Below the pieces are notes generated by a model. That model searched no databases. It saw only the letters and a program-made list of their open reading frames with translations, and was not told the origin of the DNA. A program made the translations under genes and the position numbers. From Hyphochytrium catenoides (lineage: Eukaryota; Protista; Hyphochytriomycota), in NCBI GenBank assembly GCA_900088475.1, contig FLMG01000016.1, positions 1 to 64,000 on the forward strand: DNA of 64,000 nt. The letters run 5' to 3'. Shown here one piece after another: positions 36,869 to 51,728 of the stretch (its first letter is position 1; the number at the start of each line of letters is the position of its first letter).

Positions 36869-37273
36869 GTCTCTTAACGTCCTGCTGACAGCTTTCTTCC
36901 TCTTTTTTTTTTCAAGATCCCACTGTCTTCTGTTCCCGCAGCTGCGGCTCTTATATCAGTAAACTCAGTAGTGCTTCGCAAGCTCGAAAGAAAGCTCAAA
37001 ACTCCTCTGCTGAACGGCAGCCCGTGACTTCACTCTTCAGATGGCGAGAGGGAGATTGTGAGCACCAGAGAGAGAAGCTCCAATTATCCCGTTGACGTGC
37101 TGCTTTCTTTCTGCGCCACCCTTAGCTTCGCGTTTCACTGTCTGACAATTGGACTCCCCAAAAAGAAGAGAGAGGGATCAGGCAGCCGCCGCTTTGTAGG
37201 CTCTAAGATGAGTGACCCTTCTCTCTTATTTCTCAGTGTGACCAGTCGCCACCTCTTCCGCTTCCTGCTCCCC

Positions 37274-37417
37274 CTTCTCTCTCTCCCTCTCACTTTCTCT
37301 CTCTCTCTCCTCTTGCCCCCCAACCTTTTTTCCTATTCCTGCCCCTACAGATCTCTCTCTGTCTGCCTGTCTCTCTATCTGTCTCTCTCTCTTTGTCTCT
37401 CTCTTTGTCTCTCTCTT

Positions 37418-37471
<54 letters not shown>
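37274..37471. repeat. (TC)n microsatellite including (CTCTCTCTTTGT)n units
   Basis: Long pyrimidine dinucleotide tract seen directly. Confidence 0.9.
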
Positions 37472-37474
<3 letters not shown>

Positions 37475-39821
37475 GTCGCTTCTCAATCTTCTCTTTCCGC
37501 TTCTCTCCTTGTCATCCTTTGATCTATGAAAGGTGGTCTGATTACCGGAGACACGACGATTCGTGGACAGCGCCCGGTGGCATGTGGATCCTGTGCAGAG
37601 AGTGCGTTATACGTTGTTAAATATCCTCCTAGCTAATTACTTTGCTTGATAGGAATGCGACAACATAAGGTTGAATTTAGCGCTTTACACTAACCTCAGA
37701 GGAAACGGTGCCCTGCCCCACCCTCCTGACCTCAAGCCGTGTGTTGACCTTTAACCCCAGCCCGACGGTGGGTGGGGCCGTCTGAGTACCCTCCGTAGAA
37801 TAGATATATAGGGTTGAGTTCGAGTAGGTCGGATGGGCAGGGCTGCTCGCCTCAGGATGGTATGTGGGGGGTCGGACGTCATGTGGGCGGAAGGGGGGAC
37901 GATACAGATACACCAGGATCATGGCTGAGGAGCATATCAAGAATAGGAAGCATTGATCCCTATTTTTAGAGTAATAAGCTCTTGTTATGTCAGGAATCTC
38001 TATGGGAATGTCTGTCCCAACCCCACCATTATATTAGCGCTCCCCTTTCTATGCCATTCTATGATCACTAACGCCACAAGCCCCAAGGCTAGGAAATGTA
38101 AGGCTTAGCGGTGCAGTAGGTGGCGGTGGGTAAAAGTGTAGAAATGTCCTCAAACTCTACTACTTACTTGGAAGGCATGGCAGGCTTTACTGTTTACCTT
38201 GGTACCAATTCTACTACTGCAGCCTTCAGATTGTTACTGTTTCTTTATTTTATTAGTAGAGGTTCCATTATTGTAGACTTAGGGGTTGGGCCACCGCCCC
38301 GCCCCATCAGCGACCCCATGAGAAAGATAAGCTTCAATCTTCAAAAAAGAAGATTTGCAATTTCCAGTCTCTTCTTCTTCGCACTTCTCCTCGACAGAGT
38401 TGTAAGAATAGGAGAGCGAGGAGGAGGTAGAACATTTGAACAGCAGGGACGGAGGAGGCTTGAGATATTTCCCTAATCATCTTCAGCAGCACGTTCTCTT
38501 CAACAGCAACAGTGAGCTCGTGGACAAGAGACTTCCGGTGGATCTTAAAAGGCTCGTGGTCCTCTCGTTCATCTTCGTCGAAGTAGTGCCACTCCTCCCA
38601 CTAATAGTTCTTTACTCGTTACAAACTTTAATCAAGCCACTGCTCCTTCTTCTCCCCACTCTTTGCCGCTGCTTGACCTCTCAACCCTCGACTAGCTACT
38701 ATTGCTACGCATATTATACCTCAACTCAATCATCATCTTCGGCTTTCCTTGGCTGCTGCCCATCAACTTTATGGAACATACCTTCCTTTCTCTTGTTCCT
38801 CTTCCGTCCTCTCCATTTCAGCTCGAGATGGAGATAAGAAGACGACGCTGCTCATACCACGGCCTCGTTACTGAAGCCCCTTCCTAGCAGCTTGCTTCAT
38901 CACCATGCTAGCTGCTGCTGATTGATCCCCATTCTCCTGCTCTCTAAGTAAAGTTCAGTTATTATCAGAACCAGCTCTTCTACCACCCGTAGAAGAATGT
39001 GGGGAATCCCCCAAGGCATTGTTCTTAGGTCCTCCTCGCCGTGTTGGACCCTCCCTTGCTATGTAGAACTGAGATGGTTAGATGGAGGAGAAAGTCCTTC
39101 TTCAATATTAGAAGGCGTCATTTTCATCGACGTCATGAAGACCAACACCTCTCCTTTGCTTCTTTTTTCCAATAAAGAAGAGTCCAGTTCATTTCCCCAC
39201 CACCTCTAGCAGTCCCTTTCGTCTTGTCAGCTGTGACGACTAGTCTCGTGTTATGTAGGATGCAACGGCTCTGTTTAAACGGGGCAGCCACTCATTAGGA
39301 AGAGTCACGACTCTTGATTTCAGAAAGGTCAGCAAGCAAAGGAGGTTTTGGTACGTCTCGCCCATAAAAATAGTCAATCTGGTCTTCCTATTATGGAGTA
39401 TTAGTTGCATCATATGTCTTGTCATCGGCCACACTCGTGGTGTGTCAACCTAACTACAAAGATAATAGAGCTGAAAGATAGAGCAAGGACCCATCACCCT
39501 TCTTACACCGTTGTAGACGGCAGCGAGCAAGAGCCAGAGTTACCTTGGATTGCATGCTTGCTAGCTCAGCTCTGCTCCTTAGGGAATTGGTCCTGTGTCT
39601 AAAGGTCCACAACCTTCAAATCGCGTAGAGTACGCATTAACGCGTACTAACAGTTGGCCTGCTTTAGCAACTAAGAGTTCTGCGGTCTCATTGCGAATTG
39701 CATCTGTCCTCTAAAATATCAGGGTCTGCAGGTTGCATCAGCTTTGTGGTGGTAACGGGGGAGACTCGAAACAACGCTTTCTTTAACCAGTCCGTCTGAA
39801 TGGAAACGCGCTTGTCCAGTG

Positions 39822-42800
39822 TTATGTGTGGGCGTACTCGCAGATGTGACTATAGGCGCAGAACCTGCAAGAAGAGAAAGACGGCCGAGCTGTCCAATCT
39901 TTTTGCCGTATAAGCTGGGCAGTTTCGTCAATGTAAACCATCAAGGTCTCTATCCCTTCGTCGTCTGGGACCCACTCTCCTGCATCCGAGGTCTCGATAC
40001 TACGCAGTAAGGCCTACAGAATGAAAGCTTTAGTTGTGAGATCAGAAGTCCTAGAACAGGAGAACTAAGATGACAAAGAAAATCCTGCCAGAGAGCTTTC
40101 CTTGTCTTCCTTTTACGTGCTTCCTATATATTCCTCATACTGTCTCTTTCTTGCAGGCCAAGTTCCACTCACTACATACGGCGTACCTTCGAAGGACGGT
40201 GGCCGTATACCTTTTCGTAAGCTAAGGAGTAGAGTTTTAACTGCAGACTCGACTTTGCCAATCGGGCGGGATCCGAACGGAGCCTTGACTTGTACTCTAC
40301 GATGCACACTTGACCTTCGTCTTCTTCTTCTACCAAGTCCCAGATGCCTTATAAATAGACGCAATGTCATCGAAATATGGACCACCAACCACTGTTGATA
40401 TAGAGAGCTTGTAAGAGCAAAAGGACGACAAGTGGCCCACCTGATATATCGACCGCTAAAGCAGGTAGGCTGAAGTGGAACGGCTGCTCTACTAATAGAA
40501 TCCTTCGGAACGCTTGTTCAGCACTTCTCCGACAAAAGGAATCTAGTGTCTTCCGTCCCATCTCCTGCAGCGAAGCCTTATGGGACTCGGAGTGGAAACC
40601 ACCTTCTGTCCACGCCTCCTCGTAAGCTTTCAGCACTACCTACCCTCACCGGGGGAAGTAAGCAGTTAGAGACAGGAGAGAGTACAGCAACCGCATGAAC
40701 GCCGCATGACTCACCTCAAGGTCTGGTACGTGGCCCGTCTCCTTCATGGCCTTATGATAGGAAGCTATGCCCTCGTGGAGAGCCTTGCCATAGACAAGCC
40801 ACTGGTTGGCCTTGAAATCAACTCCTAGCTTACGATAGAGAAAAAACTGGTAGGGGCAGCGGTGGTAAGCGTCCATCTGAGAGAATGATAGGCGCAATGG
40901 CTCTTGGTTGATGCTGCCCTGGGCGGACAATGATGGTCGATTGGCAAGTAGGTTCGTCTCACTCTGACAGGGCGGAATAGGGGTGGAATCCCGGGGAGTA
41001 GTGCTCGGATGAGAGTGTTGATTGAGCGAGAGAGAGAGATCGGCCAATAGCCTGCAAAGCAAGAGCGGCGGTCAGATTGCACGGACCCCAGTAAAACGGC
41101 CCTAGAGGGCAGCAGAAGGGCCTTAAGAAAGATGTCGCTCACCTGCTAGGCTTCAACCTGGTGCCCTCTTTCTCGAGAGAGCTGGTAATGATGACAGACT
41201 TACGCGCTGAAGCCATCACTTTTAGAAGGAGATTACGGTTCTGTCGAATAAAACTCACGCGTGACGGAGCTAACTGAACAGCGCAAGGGTAAGATATGGA
41301 TATTCCCGAGTAAGGCTTGTATAAGTAGAGCATCAACACTAGAAGAACAAAGGTTAATCGCAGAGTAGACAGGCAAACGGACATCTAGGATCAGTTTGAG
41401 GTGTCAAATAGGGACTTCCTCCTGCTGGAGAGGAATTCTTGAGGGAAAGTCCGGAGATATCAAGATGACAAGACCTACCACACGCAACCCGTCATCGAGC
41501 ACACTACCCGGCTCTAAAAGGTGCTTCCCTGCTAAAATGGGTGGCCTCATGAACCTTCCTGGCAAGTTCTTGTCTACTGCAGAGACTATAAATATAACGT
41601 CTGCCTCCATATCAACCGTATTCCTAAGTGTGGTCGATATAACCTCATCGGTTGTCCCATGAAGATAAGAGGAGACATAGACAAGCGAAGCATCGGAAGC
41701 TCGAAGTGGAGCACCGTCCTCTCGAAGAGCCAATAGGTCGGGGAAGAGTAGAGCTCCAGCTTTACCGGTAGCTGGACAGAAGGAGGTGGAGACGGTTAAG
41801 TCAATGATAAGAGAACCCAGAAGAGAGGGGAGTACTGCTAAAGAGAAGAGAATCAAGGAGACGGACGGAGCAGGGAGGCAGCGCCCCGTCGGTGGCGTTA
41901 CCTCTTTCAGCATTTGCCACAAGACCCAGAAAGTCGGCGACAGCGATAGAATTTTCTTCATCCTCTGCGCTTGCTGGAGCGTGAAGAGCAGGTAGCAATC
42001 CTGTTCTCTCTAGAAAAAGAATAATCTTTTCGCTACTGGACTTGCCTAGCACCTCGTCGGTCTCAAAGTAAGCCAGGTCTTCCAAGGCGCGCTTCACTGC
42101 CAGTCGATCATCATCTGAGAGGGGGAAAGGGTGCACGAGGCATATTATAGCAGGCGCTCCTCAGAAACTCTGTTTCGCGTGGTATCATCGGTTTGTTTGG
42201 GATATCCAGGTCATCCTGTCCCTGCTTCGTCACTCTCGCTTCCCCCTTAATCCTAATGTTCTTTCTGACTTGCCCCTTTGCCTCTTTTGCGTTCACACCG
42301 TCGCTCCTTGCAGCTCTACTAGTGCGCACTTAGTTACCTTGTTCTGTCGCAAATACGTAGTTCGATAGCCCTTCTCGCAGCGACGTTTGATTGGCATCAA
42401 AGTGCTGCAGAAATCTATTCATTCTGACCAGGGAGCAGCGATAGGCGGGAGAAGAGAGGAGGCCGTAAAGATGAGATGAGTCCATTGGCTGGTAGATAGA
42501 GCCCAGGAAGGACATGATCATCTTGACGTAGGGACTTGAAAAGGTCGTATGCACTGTGATCAAGAGTTTCTTAGTTATCTTCGAGGAAGAATTAGCGTAA
42601 TATCAGGAGAGGCAGAGCATGTGATAGCATAGATAAAGGGCACTCCCACACGGAAGGCGTAGTAAAACTAGGAGAGGACTCATGGAATTCTTACCGTAGT
42701 TCGACTTTATTGTGATTCCATCATTAGCTAACGCTTTGGTGAAGGATTGGAGCTCCATTCTAGAACTGCCGATTAAAGCCACCTGAAGTCCTTCCTGCAG

Positions 42801-44707
42801 CATGGTCTTGACTCTCCCCACCACATACTCCACCTCACGGTGGAACGTTGGGAATTCCCTGTGCTGAACTTGGGCTAGGCTCGATAGGGAAGAGTTAGGC
42901 AAGGAGGCAACCTTGGGTGGCCTCAGGCAGCGGTGCCCTGTGACGTTGATCTTGGCAATGGCCGAGATGGCGCTGGCAGTGGTTTGAAACGCTGTTGAAA
43001 GTATCTCTTGATGAACGTTGGAGCCACACTTTGCTGCAACGGCCTCTAACCAGCCTTCGCGGCACCCTACGGAGTCTAAACGAGTGGCAATGGGACATGC
43101 AAAAAGCATAAGACTGCTCTCTTCGCGTGCATCAGAACTTCGACTGAGTCGAGCGAGGACTTCAACTGCCACGGGGCTGACGTTTTCTAAGCCGTCTACG
43201 ACTATGTGTGGAAAGGTGTCGCTGACTTCTTCTAGCACATCGGGATGCTTCCTTAGCATTTCAGCAGTCTTATACACCATCCCCGTCCAACTCGAGAACT
43301 GGTGCTGGTCAAGCAGGGTGAGATATGCCTCATAGCATGCTGACAGCTCTTTCTGACCACCAAGATACTCAGTAGCCGCATCCAATGACCGAAAGTTAAG
43401 TGCCTCGGGCGCTGCACGATCTAAAATTTCAAAACACTGCTTTGGCGAAATGTTCTGGGCTTGCAGGTAGTCAAAGGTGGCAATTAATGCCCTTATCGAC
43501 CCGTCAGCAGCCAGTGGAGAGTAGAAGCTGCAAGTAGCACCCGTCAGGTCGTAGTCGTACCTCACCAGGAGGCACAATCAGGAAAGATACCGAGACCGAG
43601 CATCTAACGGGGCAATATAGCGGTGTGGGGACAAACAGGACGCTCGACAACAGTACCAAGAAATGGTGGTAAAAGTTAGAAGCAGAGGAGTATCCCAACA
43701 AAACTCACCGAGCTAAAGGAAGAGTGTGAATGTGTTGGTAGAGGAAGAGCTTAAGCTCGGTGCTGGAGATGGTATGATATCGAGAGGCATACTTTCCACC
43801 AGCCAGTGGGCCAAATTCTTCCAGAACTCTATCGCAGAATGAGAATATGGTATGGGCGGCTGGTGGTAACTGAGACGAATGGGAAGGAAGGGTGGCGCCC
43901 ACATTTTAGCAAGCAACGACAGAGTGGGAAGCGGCCAGAGATAGACAAATCTTTCCAACGGATAAGGCAAGCAGAGCGCCGACAACCGAAAATAGTCGAA
44001 GAAAGGTACTGAGAGAAGTGAAGCTTCATTGAGTGCGCTGGACAGAGTAAGAGGGGTAAGTCTGTTCATACATGTCAGAGTTGGTCAGGCGATGTTGCTG
44101 AACAGTGTTAGGTGATTGTTAGTACCTTTCCGTATGTGCCATTTAAATCTATAAGATGCTGAATCAAGGTGATCTCTGAGGAAGACGGGACTAACATCAG
44201 AGGCTCAGAATTGGTTGAGGAGTTCATCTCCGAGCACAAGCGAAGAAAGCGTGTGACAGCCGTGACGGTTTTGCCTGTTCTCGGAAAGCCATGCACCAGG
44301 ACTTTACCGGCGGGGTGATCTACAAGCTGAAGGACAACTCTAAATATTATCATAAATAGCGCTGGGAAGCAGAATGGGGATCAATAGAGAGACGTTCAAG
44401 AGCTAAATGGTCAATCCTAGAGGCAGCCTGCCTACAATGAACCAACCTTGCGCTGTGTCACAGTCAACTTCTCCTCCTGTAGCTTCAAACCTCGAGGATC
44501 CAGAAAGGAATAGGGCAAAGTAGAGAGGCATCTGTATACGTGCCTTCTATTCGATACGAATTCCATCCCTACAACGTCTTCGCGGCTCAGTTTCCCGAGA
44601 GTGAAGATGTGATCACCACATCGTGGCCATGGCCGTAGGGACCGTCGCCTTGACTTTGAGGCCTTTCGAGCGAAGAATTGACTCCGCAAAAAAGGCAGCA
44701 CGGCCAT
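39822..44707 (-). CDS. UvrD/AddB/AdnA-like superfamily-1 helicase fold (degenerate) fused to a C-terminal Fe-S PD-(D/E)xK nuclease; multi-exon, probable organellar presequence
   Basis: Walker A VLVHGFPRTGKT, Walker-B position HIVVDGLENVS, and RLKPSR near the end of the helicase fold. Nuclease region LSFSQMDAYHRCPYQF...YGKALH, LVEQPF, SG|IWD...IVEYKS...QLKLY, ending CRFCAYSHIC...HT* (stop 39822). Arg-rich N-terminus MAVLPFLRSQFFARKASKSRRRSLR. Confidence 0.85.
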
Positions 44708-45240
44708 TGCTCCTGAATCACTGGTTTCGACTTTCAACTCCAGTCATCGCCTTCAAAGCTGCCGCTCTTCGCCCTGCGTCTCCTCTCGTGATAAAGGCCT
44801 CATTGTTCCCATTTGACTGCCTCTTCGCAGAGATTTCCCGGAGCTCTAAACAGATTTCCGAAGCTCCGATAAGAATCCAAACACATGTCTTGAAGGAGCC
44901 TATATGGCCGGTAGCGGCTATCAAACTTGACCAAACTGTTAGACTTGACGAGTCGAAAGTGAAAATCACGTTTTGGACGGGCTTCCAAGCAACAGAATAG
45001 CGGAGCTGTACGTCACTCCTTCCCTGTTAATAAGATGTTGCCTTGGGCAAACTACTCCGCCAAGGCTATCAGTGCGTTAGCCGCTATTTTGTATCTAAAA
45101 TTTGTTGTTACTTAGTGGGAGTTTGTGGGAGAGTGAAGACTGAGAGAGTGACGAGACAGAGCAGGTGACAGACAACGCGAGTTGTAGAGATAGAAGCCTG
45201 ACTAACTAGCAGACAGTGACAAAACGATGTATATGAAACA

Positions 45241-45647: not shown

Positions 45648-47523
45648 ATGGCAGAGAAACCCAAGGCAGAGGTAGGGTTTGGCCTTCACCACCCTCTTTT
45701 CACTGATGTATGCAATCACTGTTTGACATACTTTCTGTACCACTAGGTGGAGTTGGATCCCAGCGACAGTTTGAGTTTCACATTGGTCGGTGGAACTGCA
45801 CCAGAGGCTACTTTACTCATTAGAAATGTATCCAGTGCCAAAGTGGCTTTCAAAGTCAAGACCACACAACCGAGGAGGTGAAGCATAACGGGATTCTTCG
45901 CCGTTCCTTGTCTTCTCTTAATCTAACTTTTACTCTACCGCCCGTGTAGGTACCTAGTGCGCCCCAATCAGGGCATGCTTGACCTCAACGCATCATCACA
46001 AATTACTGTCATCCTTCAGCAGAGGGACTGTGACGACTTGCTGGCTGCCGACCCCAGGTGAGACCTGCCAACAGATGGCAATTACATCTGCTAGGTCTAA
46101 AAGGTGTCCGCAAACTGGTGCGGTATACGATACAGGGACCGGGATCAGTCCAATGATAAGTTTCTGGTGCAGTCAATGGCTTTAGAGAATGACTTCTACC
46201 AAACTGTTGTGGACAAGACACCTAAGGTAATGAGGAAGGCAACAAAGCGTCTGAAAGTGGTATGGAAGCTCTAACACACCGAACTGACTAGGAGCAAGCG
46301 GATGATCTGGCGCAAATGTGGGCCAAGGCAAACAAGAAAGATCTGTCAAATAAGAAGCTTCGTTGTAGTTTTACATTGGTAGGTTCCGGTCCGCACTCGC
46401 TCTGTTCCTTTTTCTACCCCTCTATCCTGAGGAATAAGCATTGAAAATGAAGATGATGAGCGTTCCGGTCTCTCTTAGCTGCAAATTCTACATTCTCTCG
46501 GTCTCTCCTCACAATTAAAACGGGATCATGCAGCCTTCCAGTACTCGGCCTGACGCTCAGGCATCCGGAGAGGCTCCTCGCAAGACGGAGATGCTCAAAA
46601 ATGCTCTTCTAGCTGGGCAGCAGAATCTGACAGGAGAGTCTGGCAAGTCTGACGGAAGTCAGATGTTAAATGAGGTCGCTAGCCTAAGGAAGAAGTACGA
46701 CGAGGTACGCTTGTCATCGTGGCAACAGTCCCGTGCTCAGCTCTGGCTGTTCCACTTTCTCCAAACTGACAGTCCAAGTCCAAGGTTGAACGCTCGCCTA
46801 TCTTCGAATGCCTCATCACGTTGTTTTCCGGCCGTACGCTTTCTCTTACATTGTCGTGGTCTCTTCCAGCTTGTGGCATTCACAGTGCAGCTCACAGCTC
46901 AGCGGGATCAGCTAATGAACGATCTCGAAAAGTCAAAACAGAAGGCCTTGAAATATCAGGCAGAGGCAGAGAAAGCAAAAGGTAAAAATCTGTTAACAGC
47001 AGCCAGTAGTTCGCTAAGCTCTCTTCTCTTTGCGACAGAGTTACTTTCTTCCTTTCTTTCCTCATTTCCCTCTCTCTGGAGTTCTTGGTCCACGGGTGCA
47101 ATGGTTCCAGGACCGTCGACTACTCCTCTCGCTCGCTAGGGCAAGTCAATGACAATGCGGGCTGGGCTGACGTACATAGACTGTCTTGGTGCAGAAGATT
47201 GTTTCTCCGCTTTCTTCTTCTGACAACCAGTTCCCTACCTCTTCTGTCAACCTTCCCCATCTGAGTTGCTGCGTTTCACGCATCCTTGCAGAGTCAGGCC
47301 TTCGACAGAGGAATAGAGGTTCCACAGATATCTCCGCTGCGGCTACCAGTGACGCTGCGATGAAAAAAGGCCAAGTCGAAGCGGTACGTTCAGTGCAGCA
47401 TGTGGAGTGAGGCTTTCAGCTAACGGAGTTCTATTTGCAACTTGTCGTTTGCAGGGATTCAAGCTCTTCCATCTTATAGTTGCTGCCCTTTTCGCCTTCC
47501 TCATCGGAAAGTATCTGACCTAG
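45648..47523 (+). CDS. VAP: VAMP-associated protein (MSP domain, coiled coil, C-terminal TM)
   Basis: VAFKVKTTQPRR|YLVRPNQG and DKFLVQS MSP signatures, coiled coil LRKKYDE|LVAFTVQLTAQRD, tail anchor GFKLFHLIVAALFAFLIGKYLT*. Confidence 0.93.
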
Positions 47524-47650: not shown

Positions 47651-50600
47651 CTATACGAACTCGTCCTCATCTTCGTCCCGTCCGCGTGCAGCTACAGCTT
47701 TAGGGGAAGTAGGGCGAGGCGAAAGTTGGGGAGAGCGCCGATGAGGAGGAATAATAATATCGATTTCCTCATCTTCTTCCTCTGCTATGACATGAACCGG
47801 ATCGTCGGAGGGCAAAAGCCCACCACTCTCCTCTTGTCCAGTCTCCAGCGACCTTGCGGAGTTCACGTCGTCTGAGCGTGCCCCGCCGACTATTAACTCG
47901 TTGTCATCCCCTAATTGAACGCCAAGGCATAGCAAAGGGAAACCGCACAAGAAGCAGGAACGATCAACGGACAACGTTAGGCTGAAGGAGGTACCCATGA
48001 CAGTTAGAAAAGATTCCCTACCTTCTTGGTCAGCCCCATCTACACGCTCCCACGAGTGTCGTTTCGTTCTCCAGATCACGGCCACTGCTATAAGCAGCAG
48101 GCACCCAGCGGCAATAGCAACAGAAGCCACCACTACATAAGCAGGAACACCCTCGTCCTCGTCCTTTCCCTTGTCAGCACCAGCAGCTACGTTGGTCTGT
48201 GCGCTCGCAGCTTCTCCTGCAATCACGGAAGGAGAAGGGGTTGTGAACGGTGCAGGAGACGGAATAGGGGAGGTTGGACTAGAGGGCGATGGGGTTGGAG
48301 CTGCGGCGGGCTCCTTGCCTGATGTGGGGGCGAGTGCATTTGTTGGTGTGGCGGTAGTTGCAGTAGGCACCGGCGATGTAGGAGTGAGTGGAGTGGTTGG
48401 TGCAGCACTGGGGACACCGTTGGCAGGTGTCGGACCAGAGGTCGTTAGGGGAATGGTGCTATTGGTGGTTGTGTTAGAAGTTGCTGCAGTTGTGTTTGCA
48501 ACTGTGGGCGTAGTCGTGGAAGATGTCGTAGTATTGGTATCAGAAGGGGCCCCTGTAGGGAGCACTGTTATCGCAATATCTTCAGCTGCAGACGTAACGT
48601 TGGTAGTGTTTGAGCCCGCAACAACCGTGGCATTTTCTACTGTCCCTGGCGGCTTCGTGGGCACTGCTGGCGGAGCCACCAGAGGAGGAGAAGGGGTGGT
48701 AGCATTAGCGTCAGGTGAGGTTGGGGTCATTACTTCTGTGGGACCGACGGTTTTTGCCGCAGTTACATTCGCCGTGTTGTTAGCAATAGGGACCATGGCC
48801 TTCCCGATGGTAGGGGCAGCCGTAGAAATAGTAGTTGGGCTGACAGTAGGAATGGCCGTCGATGGCTGACCATCTGTGTTGGAGGAGAGAACAGACGAGG
48901 CGCGAGGAAAGTGTGAGGCGCTGCAATGTTTGGCCTCTTTGGGGTTCAAGATGGCGGGAGTGCTCTCCTTTGACACGCCACATCATACGGGCCCACAACC
49001 GACAAAAGCCAACCCACCATCGCCCAAGAGTTAAACGGCAAACTCTCTAGAGTAAGGTAAAAGTGCAGGAAAATGCGACGCACAAGGGTAAAAGAATGAA
49101 CCTTACCCGGTGCAGTGCAGTCAGTCTTCATGAACGCAAGCCTTCTCCCTTCAACGTCAAAGATCACATTGTGATTCATCATCACGGAGGCACCAATCAC
49201 TGCCCAGAGAGAGAAGCTTAGCACCTCTAGTGCATCAACCAATGTGTTGGTCCCTTACCACCTCCCGAGCCTTCGGTGAAAAAGATCGTGGTGACGTAGG
49301 TGTCAGCTTTCTTCTTTGACTTCTCAAAGTACTGAGTTGCTGGAATAGACAATGTGACGGCCGACTTGGAGATACCTGGGGCAAGCCAAGACTTTAGGAC
49401 TATGGCATAAGGCCTTTCCTGTACTTCCCTCCTTCCTCCTTCCCCGTACTCGCTCATCTCACTCTTGACACAGCGGCCCTGAAGCGCTTCAGTGCTTAGA
49501 AATTTCTGTCGTGAGCAATTGCCGAAAGCGTCTGGCTCTCTTTGGCCTCGGTAAGAAACTAGATCGCATTGCGCTCAACTGTCTTTCTCGTAGCCAAGGC
49601 TGGCCTTATTCCTTGATTTCCCCGCCTCTTCCTTACCTTCAAAGACAAAGACGAGGTCCGGAAGCTTCTTGAAGGTTTCTTTGGGGATCACAATAGTGGC
49701 ATCTTCTTTGTTGGGATAGTCGAGGCCCGTAGCTTCCTTGAACTTCTTCAGGAAAGGGCCTGCCGCTCTACTGCTCAGGTAGGTGTCCGTGGTCCCGCTG
49801 TCCACTATGGTGCCCTTCCCTTGGTTCCAAACATACTCTGGTAGCCCTAAACCGCCATCTTGACCAATCTTGAAATCCAACATCTTCACGTTAAACCACC
49901 TGGAAGGCAAGTGGGAAGGGTAGAGGGCAGAACCGGAAGTGGCAAGAGCAAGAGGGGAAATAGCGATTAGATATTTTAGCTTCTCAAGGTCTTCTTCGTT
50001 TACTTGAGATACCCGCTCGAACTGGTTGGACCAATGCGGAGCCAATCAGGCTCTGAGGCGTTTCCGCGAGTGGGCTCGCCTATCGTCATGTACCCGCCTT
50101 TCGGTGCGAAGCACAAGCTAAACATCTCTCTATTAATCTTCTTCTGCTTTCTCATTGCGGAGATCAGGTTGTTTCCTTCAAACGCAAGGGATACCGGGCA
50201 AAGTCAGTGCTTGTCCACACAAGATAAACCGCATACTGTTTTACAGTCACAGCAGCTTAAGGGACGAGGGTAGCACCAGTTGGTAATCGAGTAAAAAGAA
50301 GATGAAAATCCAGAGATGATAAATAATATAGGTGGGCAGCTGACGGGACGGACGAGACGTCTTTCATAGAGCATGAAAGAAGAGGAAAGAGACAGCGAGA
50401 GCTCTGCGTTCAGACTAAACGAGGTACCTGTATTCGATAGCCCAATAATGCCATTCTCGACTTGAGTCACAAAGAGAGCTACAGAATGTTACGTCAATTC
50501 AGGCACAGACACAACGCCGACGTAAGAAGGAGGTAGGAGTGAGAGCAAACTAACGCACTTATGCGTGGCACACTGGGACACGTGGGCTAAGAGAGCCAGC

Positions 50601-51728
50601 ATTGCCGGTGAAGGACGCGCAAAAGTAGTTAACTTACCAGTCGTGAAGTATTGACAAGCGAACTCAAAGGGCACGCCCTCCAAGGAGGAGTTACCCGAGG
50701 GTCGCTTTGCATCACTGTCAAAAGTGACCAGGTCCCGAATCTTTACCCCTTTCCACTGACTCCCCTCAGAGTAGCTCTACAATCGCCATAGTGCAATTAG
50801 TATGCCAGCAGGATAAGTAACGAGTTGCAAATAGAGAGTTGCTTCGCAGTCTCTAAAGAGAATGAAGCAAGACAAAGCACGTTTAATGGTGACAGACCTG
50901 CACTATCGCGCATTTGTTCTCTAAGTGATAGTCCTGGCTGCAGCCTGCGGTGTAGGGCACATAGGAGGCGCTCGAGCTCTTGCTTGCGTCAAAATACTTA
51001 TCTGTGTGGTTACCACACACTTTCGTCTCACATCTGAATGCCATTTGGTCGGAAAGTCAGGCCGGAGGCATCATGGAAAGGAAATGTTAAAGCAAAGAAG
51101 AACTCGAATAGAGAAGATGAAGAGGTCTCAACCAAGAAAGAGAGCAGGAGCACCGCGCTGCAGAATATTCTTCCTCTAAGAAGACATACGTACTGTGCAC
51201 AAGGAAATGCGAGGATGTGACTGCCAGTATCCAGGATAACAGAGGCACGTTGTGGTGGGGTTCCCACTAGAACCTCAGCATAGTGAGTCCTAAAGTGCAT
51301 TGCGTCATGTGTCAAAGATCCTGCTCAAAATCAAGAACCACACAACAGTAATGTGACACCTACCCTTCGCCCACTGCTAAGGCGACTGTGTGCATATCAA
51401 TGTCTGCCAGTGAGCGGCGGAACCGTGCTCTTCTCTGTCTGACACGCTAGAGCCACGATTTTAGAATAGAATTTTTGAAAGAAAGTGCAAGAGAAGGTAA
51501 CCCATGAAAGAAGATCCTACAAGGAAAAAGCAAACATGTCCACCTTACTCGCATCAGTGTACTTGGGTCTCGTTGTAGAGCTATTCTGTTGCTCGAAGCG
51601 GTAAAGAGCTCTTGATCAGGAGCACTATTTCCAGAAAAGGGAGAGAGAACAACTTCTTCACTTCCGTAGGCCTGTCCTGCGCAAAACAGAGCCATCCCCA
51701 GCAGCGCAATATAACGACAAACGCCCAT
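47651..51728 (-). CDS. A1 aspartic protease, plasmepsin V/ASP5-like, with signal peptide, mucin-like stalk, TM helix and acidic cytosolic tail
   Basis: Signal MGVCRYIALLGMALFCAGQAYG; THYAEVLVGTPPQRASVILDTGSHILAFPC; SYSEGSQWKG; TIVDSGTTDTYL; VIGASVMMNHNVIFDVEGRRLAF; T/P/N-rich stalk; TM YVVVASVAIAAGCLLLIAVAVIW. Confidence 0.9.

What the first reader, a model, noticed from the sequence alone, without database searches (positions are those of the whole stretch)
39822..44707. Eukaryotic organelle-targeted AddB/AdnA-like pseudo-helicase with an intact Fe-S nuclease
Seen: a UvrD-type layout in which the ATPase motifs after Walker A are systematically degenerate. Walker B reads VVDGLEN (for VDExQD), motif III reads LFACPIAT (for VGDxxQSIY), motif V reads TTLRNTVDMEAD (for TxHxxKGLEF), and motif VI reads NRNLLLKVMASAR (for ERRLxYVAxTRA). 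The nuclease keeps E, GxxD, EYKS, QLxLY and a 1+3 Cys arrangement (RCP...CRFCxxxxxC). The gene has many spliceosomal introns and an Arg-rich presequence. Known: an inactive SF1 fold plus an iron-staple nuclease is the design of bacterial AddB and resembles AdnA, both acting in double-strand-break resection with an active motor partner. Inference: a domesticated bacterial-type resection nuclease for mitochondrial or plastid DNA, either with a partner encoded elsewhere or acting alone.
Basis: partly seen in the sequence, partly recalled or inferred. Interest (0 to 1): 0.78.

Follow-up and report, generated by a model that had tools for sequence, protein, structure and literature searches.

The report
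Dead-helicase, live-nuclease gene of oomycete kin
This is a real 12-exon nuclear gene for a protein whose helicase motor has decayed while its iron-sulfur DNA-cutting domain is intact. It resembles bacterial AddB/AdnA, has unstudied counterparts in all sampled water moulds, and probably works on mitochondrial DNA.

Summary
On the minus strand, 44707-39822, twelve exons joined by eleven GT-AG introns give one 1083-aa protein. It has an Arg-rich, acid-free N-terminus and a UvrD/PcrA-type SF1A layout. That layout keeps Walker A (GFPRTGKT) and the Walker-B Asp but lacks motifs III, V and VI. The C-terminal PD-(D/E)XK nuclease has every catalytic motif and the 1+3 Cys pattern.

The gene is not unique. 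Colinear "hypothetical proteins" exist in Pythium, Globisporangium, Nothophytophthora, Plasmopara and Aphanomyces (25-26% identity overall, 30-40% in the nuclease). They share the motor decay, and the window protein is sister to all of them.

The nuclease is closest to AdnA (Z 20, profile E 6e-16), then Cas4/ACE1 and AddB. The predicted whole fold of an ortholog matches AdnA and AddB best among solved structures.

The helicase-like part is nearer by sequence to PcrA/UvrD and to stand-alone bacterial helicase-nuclease fusions of about 950-990 aa. AddB family thresholds are not met. It therefore works like AddB/AdnA by independent decay and is not a member.

Mitochondrial targeting and a role in mtDNA end processing are inferred, not shown. 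I found no paper on the family. Verdict: a new variant of a known kind, of moderate-to-good interest.

The parts
39822..44707 (-). Whole coding region: 12 exons, 11 GT-AG introns, 1083 aa. Exons (high to low): 44707-44436, 44339-44126, 43869-43709, 43560-42695, 42553-42338, 42114-41902, 41771-41482, 41273-41143, 41051-40715, 40639-40441, 40347-40187, 40013-39822 (stop included).
   Evidence: Model built. It is colinear with oomycete and bacterial homologs by blastp and tblastn. The alignments show no missing conserved block.
44615..44707 (-). N-terminal extension resembling a mitochondrial presequence (aa 1-31: 7 Arg, 2 Lys, no Asp or Glu). The whole ~90-aa lead has no counterpart in the bacterial relatives.
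   Evidence: Composition and helical moment. Full-length oomycete orthologs also start with Arg-rich, acid-poor leads, whereas bacterial kin start at the Q motif. No targeting predictor was available.
44267..44290 (-). Walker A / helicase motif I, GFPRTGKT, intact.
43182..43205 (-). Motif II remnant IVVDGLEN: the Walker-B Asp is kept and the catalytic Glu is replaced by Gly.
   Evidence: Alignment with the bacterial VDEFQD. It lies inside the uninterrupted 866-nt exon 4.
43083..43112 (-). Position of motif III (LMLFACPIAT). The GDxxQ and aromatic pawl are absent.
   Evidence: In the ortholog's AF2 model this region has low confidence (residues 314-344).
41599..41634 (-). Position of motif V (TTLRNTVDMEAD), degenerate.
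41202..41240 (-). Position of motif VI (NRNLLLKVMASAR), degenerate.
39825..40903 (-). Cas4/AdnA/AddB-type PD-(D/E)XK nuclease domain (aa ~838-1083, across exons 9-12). It carries Cys853 (40841-40882 region), YGKALHEG (40769-40792), GIWD (split over intron 10), VEYKS (40286-40300), QLKLY (40229-40243) and CRFCAYSHIC (39840-39869).
   Evidence: Pfam PDDEXK_1 on three pieces. Motif alignments. Ortholog domain model against the PDB: AdnA Z 20.0, ACE1 17.0, AddB 16.1. Profile search: AdnA 6e-16.

Best explanation
This is a nuclear gene of an intron-rich relative of the oomycetes. It encodes a single-chain 'pseudo-helicase plus nuclease'.

Shown:
- The N-terminal two thirds keep the four-subdomain SF1A (PcrA/UvrD) layout.
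- That part has lost the motifs that couple ATP hydrolysis to DNA translocation (III, V, VI and the DExx Glu).
- It keeps Walker A and the Walker-B Asp.
- The C-terminal third is an intact AdnA/AddB/Cas4-type PD-(D/E)XK nuclease with the four cysteines that bind an Fe-S cluster in those enzymes.
- The same decayed design is shared by orthologs across oomycetes, so it is old and maintained.

Inferred:
- The Arg-rich N-terminus sends the protein to the mitochondrion.
- There the dead helicase core acts as a DNA-binding and strand-guiding scaffold, possibly still binding nucleotide, as in AddB.
- The scaffold feeds a single strand, most likely the 5'-ended one as in AdnA and AddB, into the Fe-S nuclease.
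- The protein thereby trims or resects ends and tails of mtDNA during recombination-dependent replication, repair or clearance of broken molecules.
- Any unwinding is supplied by another helicase or is not needed.
For: - Gene model and motifs.
- Family-wide decay with an invariant nuclease.
- Monophyly of the degenerate eukaryotic clade, with the window protein sister to 13 oomycete sequences (100/100 and 100/99).
- Shared derived nuclease signatures LHE, GxWD and E[FY]KS, against bacterial H-x, GR-x-D and D[YF]KT.
- Fold of the ortholog P0006 (pLDDT 84) best matches AdnA 7sjr_A (2.5e-25) and AddB 4ceh_B (5e-24).
- Nuclease domain (pLDDT 93): AdnA Z 20.0 at 25% identity, ACE1 17.0, AddB 16.1, Dna2 13.2, MGME1 13.0, Exo5 12.6, AdnB 10.7, RecB 8.7.
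- Sequence profile of the nuclease: AdnA 6e-16, AddB 1e-4.
- AddB keeps only motif I plus an Asp at the NTP site and uses the dead helicase for ssDNA recognition: PMC3321194.
- The AdnA Fe-S nuclease takes the 5' strand: PMC5314763 and PMC13000450.
- Arg-rich, acid-poor N-termini occur in the window protein and in the full-length oomycete orthologs but not in bacterial kin.
- There is no ER signal peptide. Earlier notes place the genome in the oomycete lineage, which from general knowledge has no plastid.
Against: - No transcript evidence was available.
- No targeting predictor or localisation data exist. The basic stretch KSRRR could equally be a nuclear localisation signal.
- Structure predictions were made on a 25%-identical ortholog, not on the window protein, because a spliced sequence has no reference.
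- Walker A is lost in the Globisporangium and Peronosporales orthologs, so nucleotide binding cannot be essential to the family's core job.
- Nothing here shows the substrate, the strand polarity or any link to mtDNA.
- The rest of the genome could not be searched for a motor partner.
Confidence: 0.6

Rival explanations
1. It is a true organellar AddAB- or AdnAB-type system. On this reading the protein is the AddB/AdnA subunit inherited together with an active AddA/AdnB-like motor subunit encoded elsewhere in the genome, and the two act as a heterodimeric resection machine.
For: The whole-chain fold and the nuclease are closest to AdnA and AddB among solved structures. A dead helicase with only Walker A is the AddB hallmark.
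Against: - AddB models are far below cut-off: 9-25 bits against 486-904.
- The helicase-part profile finds PcrA, UvrD, AddA and AdnB, but not AddB or AdnA.
- The nearest full-length kin are stand-alone bacterial fusions with live motors and no neighbouring second subunit.
- No partner gene lies next to the gene in the window or in Pythium or Aphanomyces.
Confidence: 0.1
2. It acts in the nucleus or cytosol, not in an organelle. It could be a DNA-repair nuclease, or a defence nuclease against invading DNA in a genome that carries giant-virus-like insertions.
For: The basic N-terminal stretch could be an NLS. The nuclease resembles the Argonaute-associated Cas4 enzyme ACE1 (Z 17.0). Earlier notes report viral insertions in this genome.
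Against: N-termini across the orthologs look like classical presequences (for example MLRAAARRVPPRRSWRRW...) and not like internal NLSs. The gene is single, conserved, and its tree matches oomycete phylogeny, with none of the turnover typical of defence genes. No Argonaute or defence neighbours are present.
Confidence: 0.15
3. The motor is not dead. The divergent motifs still support ATP hydrolysis and translocation, so the protein is a self-sufficient helicase-nuclease like its bacterial cousins.
For: Walker A and the Walker-B Asp are intact. Pythium oligandrum even keeps DE (VVDELER).
Against: Motif III with its pawl residue, motif V and motif VI are unrecognisable in every member of the clade. 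Several orthologs have also lost Walker A. Pfam UvrD_C is undetectable on the window pieces.
Confidence: 0.1
4. It is a decaying or non-expressed gene.
For: No RNA run could be listed. The branch is long.
Against: There are twelve open exons with canonical splice sites and no frame break. All nuclease catalytic residues and all four Cys are conserved against relatives that are only 25-40% identical.
Confidence: 0.03

Closest known systems
AdnA subunit of mycobacterial AdnAB (PDB 6ppj/7sjr/9np6 chain A)
   Same: It has the same order of parts: a UvrD-like N-terminal domain followed by a C-terminal nuclease with an Fe-S cluster. It is the best structural match for the whole ortholog (E 2.5e-25) and for the nuclease domain (Z 20.0, 25% identity, 240 residues). 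It is also the best sequence-profile match for the nuclease (6e-16). AdnA is the trailing, non-essential motor and cuts the 5' strand.
   Different: AdnA keeps Walker A, Walker B and the motif III loop (PMC3321194). It works as a heterodimer with AdnB from an operon. Here motifs III, V, VI and the DExx Glu are gone, no partner is known, and the helicase-like part does not find AdnA by sequence.
AddB subunit of AddAB (PDB 3u44/4ceh chain B)
   Same: The design is identical: an inactivated UvrD-like helicase retaining only Walker A plus an Asp at the NTP site, followed by a RecB-family nuclease stapled by a 1+3 Cys Fe-S cluster. It is the second-best whole-chain structural match (5e-24), and the nuclease scores Z 16.1.
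   Different: Sequence relationship is weak and confined to the nuclease (1e-4). AddB equivalog cut-offs are missed by a wide margin. AddB needs AddA. The decay here happened separately, inside a eukaryotic clade.
Stand-alone bacterial PcrA-like helicase / Cas4-like nuclease fusions of ~940-990 aa (e.g. P0003, P0016, P0033-P0039; Atlas clusters commonest in Chloroflexota and Acidobacteriota)
   Same: They are the closest full-length kin outside eukaryotes. Alignments are colinear (E 1e-42 to 1e-45). TM is 0.86 over 907 residues for the oomycete ortholog. The nuclease motifs and Cys pattern are the same.
   Different: The bacterial proteins have all seven SF1 motifs, score best to PcrA and have no N-terminal extension. 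To my knowledge they are themselves uncharacterised.
Oomycete 'hypothetical proteins' (Pythium oligandrum TMW67351.1, P. insidiosum GLD99067.1, Aphanomyces, Globisporangium, Nothophytophthora, Plasmopara halstedii)
   Same: They belong to the same family, with the same decayed motor, the same nuclease signatures (LHE, GxWD, E[FY]KS) and the same kind of N-terminus.
   Different: Overall identity is only 25-26%. The window protein branches outside all of them. It keeps more ancestral features (Walker A, TIFSFCDRVL) and is broken by 11 introns.
Eukaryotic mitochondrial nucleases Dna2, Exo5 and MGME1
   Same: They have a PD-(D/E)XK fold, with an Fe-S cluster in Dna2 and Exo5. They process ssDNA ends in mtDNA maintenance. 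Structural similarity is Z 12.6-13.2.
   Different: The architecture differs. Dna2 has the nuclease first and a live SF1B helicase after it. Exo5 and MGME1 have no helicase-like part. All three are clearly more distant than AdnA and AddB.

Membership tests
AddB (AddAB subunit B) | N-terminal UvrD-like fold with all helicase motifs missing except Walker A (PMC3321194) | tested here: met
   Walker A is intact and the Walker-B Asp is kept. Motifs III, V and VI and the DExx Glu are absent.
AddB (AddAB subunit B) | C-terminal RecB-family nuclease with 1+3 Cys ligands for a 4Fe-4S cluster | tested here: met
   C853 plus C1069/C1072/C1078, and all nuclease motifs, are present. Actual cluster binding cannot be tested here.
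AddB (AddAB subunit B) | Scores above the curated AddB models (TIGR02773, TIGR02786) | tested here: not met
   A window piece scores 9.1 bits against a 903.7 cut-off. The ortholog P0004 scores 25.5 bits against 486.5. The family helicase-part profile does not hit AddB at E<=1.
AddB (AddAB subunit B) | Obligate partner AddA, normally encoded next to it | tested here: inconclusive
   No helicase gene lies adjacent in the window or in the Pythium and Aphanomyces loci. The rest of the genome could not be searched.
AdnA (AdnAB subunit A) | Fe-S nuclease domain of the AdnA type | tested here: met
   AdnA is the top hit by structure (Z 20.0) and by profile (6e-16 over the whole domain).
AdnA (AdnAB subunit A) | Motor-like domain retaining Walker A, Walker B and the motif III loop | tested here: not met
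   DExx reads DGLE and motif III is absent. AdnA is not found by the helicase-part profile.
Stand-alone bacterial PcrA-like/Cas4-like helicase-nucleases | Colinear UvrD-helicase + UvrD_C + PDDEXK_1 in one chain of ~950-990 aa | tested here: met
   blastp E 1e-42 to 1e-45 over residues 94-1081. TM 0.86 for the ortholog.
Stand-alone bacterial PcrA-like/Cas4-like helicase-nucleases | Intact SF1 motor motifs | tested here: not met
   UvrD_C is not detectable on the window pieces.
Oomycete-lineage degenerate helicase-nuclease clade (unnamed) | Shared derived signatures (LHE, GxWD, E[FY]KS), a decayed motor, and grouping in a tree | tested here: met
   The clade is one side of a branch at 100/100 in two trees. 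The tool's long-branch warning is noted.
CRISPR Cas4 | Scores above TIGR00372 and stands as a small stand-alone nuclease in a cas locus | tested here: not met
   17.2 bits against a cut-off of 65. The domain is fused to a 830-aa helicase-like region in a eukaryotic gene.

The most novel reading that the evidence does not exclude
A motor-less helicase-nuclease has re-invented the AddB design inside eukaryotes and works without any AddA-like partner. On this reading the dead SF1A core is a sequence- or structure-reading module, possibly nucleotide-gated in the lineages that keep Walker A. It would position an Fe-S nuclease on mitochondrial DNA ends, giving pseudofungi (oomycetes and their intron-rich relatives) an mtDNA end-processing pathway with no counterpart in animals, fungi or plants.
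Probability: 0.25. Interest if true: 0.8.

Novelty: new variant of a known kind. Interest (0 to 1): 0.6.

Why it matters
Helicase-nucleases with one dead motor (AddB, RecC, and in part AdnA) are textbook bacterial break-resection parts. No eukaryotic counterpart has been described.

This work defines a conserved eukaryotic clade that reached the same design independently. Its members carry mitochondrial-type leaders, and the clade occurs in a lineage that includes major plant and animal pathogens.

Three consequences follow:
- It gives a concrete, testable candidate for how these organisms process mtDNA ends.
- It offers a natural series for asking what a dead helicase is kept for. The series runs from a live motor in bacteria and some protists, through Walker A only in this genome, Aphanomyces and some Pythium, to no Walker A in Globisporangium and Peronosporales.
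- The searches here found no relatives in plants or animals, so the family may be lineage-restricted. Those searches were limited.

Tried and rejected
- RNA evidence: the look-up of sequencing runs listed no run, so read laying was not used and no junction is confirmed by reads.
- The word search with exon 4 found nothing in the 158-504 aa range.
- The whole-library phmmer with exon 4 gave only 18 hits, all at 36% identity or less, and did not return the window's own protein.
- A metagenome scan with exon 4 found no relative.
I did not pursue it.
- Alignment A1, which mixed full-length proteins with window fragments, yielded a truncated 397-position profile. I replaced it with A2.
- I could not fold or profile the spliced window protein with the reference-only tools, because a spliced sequence has no reference. 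I folded the ortholog P0006 and its nuclease domain instead, with window exon pieces as alignment rows.
- Six full-text searches found papers on AddAB and AdnAB but none on this eukaryotic family.
- Rejected, mis-splicing restoring canonical motifs: the degenerate motifs lie inside single exons and are shared by orthologs.
- Rejected, separate helicase and nuclease genes: the colinear single-HSP alignments to oomycete proteins argue against it.
- Rejected, viral or recent bacterial insertion: the gene has 11 spliceosomal introns, local GC like its flanks, and a tree that follows oomycete phylogeny.
- Rejected, plastid targeting: there is no signal-peptide-like hydrophobic start, and earlier notes place the genome in the oomycete lineage, which from general knowledge lacks plastids.


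Full report
**1. What is in the sequence**

On the minus strand between 44707 and 39822 the three reading frames hold a chain of open segments. These join through eleven canonical GT-AG introns of 75-256 nt into a 3252-nt coding sequence of 1083 codons with no internal stop.

Pfam run on the separate exon pieces gives UvrD-helicase (1.4e-5, big exon). It gives PDDEXK_1 on three pieces, covering the start, middle and end of that model (8.6e-8, 2.2e-4, 2.8e-3). tblastn of relatives back onto the window gives colinear hits only within these exons and no second copy. Local GC content matches the flanks. No RNA run could be listed, so the junctions rest on frame, splice consensus and homology.

**2. 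Motifs**

I aligned the protein with active bacterial relatives and eukaryotic relatives.
- Walker A is intact (GFPRTGKT, aa 108-115).
- Motif II reads IVVDGLEN against VDEFQD. The Asp is kept and the catalytic Glu is lost.
- The motif III position reads LMLFACPIAT against VVGDDDQSIY.
- Motif V reads TTLRNTVDMEAD against TxHxAKGLEF.
- Motif VI reads NRNLLLKVMASAR against ERRLFYVAxTRA.

Motifs II and III lie in one uninterrupted 866-nt exon, and V and VI each lie in single exons. Splicing errors therefore cannot be the cause.

The nuclease keeps the Cys-bearing first helix (SQMDAYHRCP, C853), YGKALHEG, GIWD, VEYKS, QLKLY and CRFCAYSHIC (C1069, C1072, C1078).

**3. Relatives**

A whole-library phmmer with the 288-aa exon 4 found only 18 proteins at E<=1e-3 among 1.84 billion representatives. 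A word search in the 158-504 aa range found none.

blastp of the spliced model against the retrieved proteins gave full-length colinear alignments:
- Pythium oligandrum TMW67351.1: 1e-65, 25% identity.
- Aphanomyces stellatus: 1e-64, 26% identity.
- Pythium insidiosum.
- Bacterial fusions of 943-975 aa: 1e-24 to 1e-45.

Cluster look-up and a second word search using the nuclease region extended the eukaryotic set. It now includes Globisporangium ultimum and G. splendens, Nothophytophthora, Plasmopara halstedii and three more Aphanomyces species. All are named hypothetical or carry automatic names.

Every eukaryotic member lacks motifs III, V and VI, and most read D[GD] at DExx. Walker A survives in the window protein, Aphanomyces, P. 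oligandrum and one Pythium-like metagenomic sequence (P0024). The P. insidiosum model starts downstream of the motif, so it is uninformative. Walker A is gone in Globisporangium and the Peronosporales. The nuclease motifs and four Cys are invariant.

The eukaryotic sequences share derived nuclease signatures (LHE, GxWD, E[FY]KS) against bacterial H-x, GR-x-D and D[YF]KT.

In two maximum-likelihood trees the degenerate eukaryotic sequences form one side of a 100/100 branch. The window protein is sister to all 13 oomycete sequences (100/99). Within the oomycetes, the Aphanomyces sequences separate from the Pythium, Globisporangium and Peronosporales sequences, as I expect from oomycete phylogeny. 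The tool warns about long branches. The shared signatures give independent support for the grouping.

Earlier notes on this genome describe it as an unidentified, intron-rich, oomycete-like microbe. That fits a position just outside the oomycetes.

**4. What it resembles**

*Helicase-like part, by sequence.* A profile of five oomycete proteins hits PcrA (5e-14), UvrD, UvrD1, AddA (1.2e-4) and AdnB (4.7e-4). It does not hit AddB or AdnA at E<=1.

*Curated models.* The bacterial kin score best to PcrA and reach no equivalog cut-off. The eukaryotic proteins touch only Cas4 and the nuclease part of alpha-proteobacterial AddB, both far below cut-off.

*Whole fold.* An AF2 model of the A. stellatus ortholog (pLDDT 84) matches PDB chains in this order: AdnA (2.5e-25), AddB (5e-24), AdnB, AddA, UvrD, PcrA, Rep, RecB. 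The ESM Atlas model of the same protein superposes at TM 0.86 over 907 residues on a ~980-aa bacterial UvrD+UvrD_C+PDDEXK_1 cluster.

*Nuclease domain alone* (pLDDT 93). The matches are AdnA Z 20.0 (25% identity, 240 residues), ACE1 17.0, AddB 16.1, Cas4 13.8, Dna2 13.2, MGME1 13.0, Exo5 12.6, AdnB 10.7 and RecB 8.7. A sequence profile of the domain gives AdnA 6e-16 over its full length, AdnB 4e-9 (partial), Cas4 1.8e-5 and AddB 1e-4.

*Literature.* AddB has lost all helicase motifs except Walker A, keeps an Asp at the NTP site, and uses the dead helicase as an ssDNA (Chi) reader stabilised by nucleotide binding (PMC3321194). Its Fe-S cluster, held by one distant and three C-terminal cysteines, is needed for stability and DNA-end binding (PMC2887965). 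AdnA is the AddB-equivalent, carries an Fe-S cluster, binds AMPPNP in a motor-like domain and receives the 5' strand (PMC5314763, PMC13000450).

**5. Reading**

The protein works like AddB/AdnA, and its nuclease is a true homolog of the AdnA/AddB/Cas4 Fe-S nuclease group. It is not a member of either family.

The nearest full-length kin are stand-alone bacterial helicase-nucleases with live PcrA-like motors. These are encoded among housekeeping genes with no second subunit beside them. The motor decay is confined to one eukaryotic clade. The AddB-like state is therefore best read as parallel evolution.

The oomycete genes are ordinary nuclear genes with no helicase neighbour.

**6. Targeting**

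The first 31 residues hold 9 basic and no acidic residues. The helical hydrophobic moment reaches about 0.7.

Full-length oomycete orthologs start with similar Arg-rich, acid-poor leads. Bacterial kin begin directly at the Q motif. There is no signal-peptide-like start, and the lineage lacks plastids as far as I know. The mitochondrion is therefore the favoured destination.

This is inference. No predictor was available, and the basic run could be an NLS.

**7. Function**

I commit to an mtDNA end or tail-processing nuclease whose dead SF1A core guides a strand into the Fe-S nuclease (confidence about 0.6 for the whole package).

The structural description is close to certain. The compartment and substrate are not. 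Loss of Walker A in several orthologs argues that nucleotide binding is dispensable for the core role.

**8. Novelty and limits**

Six full-text searches found nothing on this family. Its members sit in databases as hypothetical proteins.

Two limits apply. The structures are of an ortholog, not of the window protein.

Noticed in passing
L005:432-3637 (NCBI GCA_049309705.1 contig JBMUHC010002959.1); also L006 (Logan SRR19745161): An intron-broken gene in 41% GC DNA, presumably eukaryotic, from an organism I could not identify. It encodes a relative with live motor motifs (AGPGTGKT, VIVDEVQD, FGDDDLAIFRWRGA, NNYRS, EEERRLVYMLLTRA) and the same nuclease start (FDRCPLHYYY). The contig ends before the rest of the nuclease. 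In the tree it falls unresolved between the bacterial and degenerate eukaryotic groups.
   Followed up: partly
P0015 (EukProt Picozoa sp. SAG31, 721 aa): A Picozoa single-cell assembly protein with canonical motifs II, III, V and VI and no nuclease domain in the model. It may be a live-motor eukaryotic relative or a bacterial contaminant.
   Followed up: no
P0036 (Candidatus Rokubacteria MAG, 1334 aa): This bacterial relative carries an insertion of about 350 aa with intein-type Pfam domains (PF14890, PF13403). The insertion sits exactly inside helicase motif III, between DDDQ and SIYKWRGA.
   Followed up: no
orthologs P0025-P0032 (Globisporangium, Nothophytophthora, Plasmopara): Walker A is lost in these lineages (for example SSVDTKYKS and SSDVVTKNR where GxxxxGKS stands). 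It survives in Aphanomyces, Pythium oligandrum, the Pythium-like P0024 and the window protein. This looks like stepwise decay of the nucleotide site within the family.
   Followed up: partly
window 44718-44747 (-): A 9-codon upstream ORF (ATG at 44747, stop ending at 44718) lies in another frame and ends 10 nt before the main ATG. Whether it lies in the 5' UTR is unknown.
   Followed up: no
window 45747-45881 (+), 47651-48976 (-), 49575-51315 (-): Neighbouring genes. An MSP/VAP-like exon diverges from the gene's 5' end. A 441-aa Thr/Pro/Ser-rich mucin-like ORF has one hydrophobic span. Exons of an aspartic protease carry DTGS and DSGT motifs. I recognised these by eye only.
   Followed up: no
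window 37226-37486: A long (CT)n/(GA)n-type simple repeat gives SLSLSL and RERERE reading frames on the two strands.
   Followed up: no
L003:1-1392 and L004:1069-4676: A Na+/H+ exchanger gene lies within about 9 kb of the ortholog in both Pythium oligandrum and Aphanomyces stellatus. This may be conserved micro-synteny among oomycetes. I did not look for it in the window.
   Followed up: no
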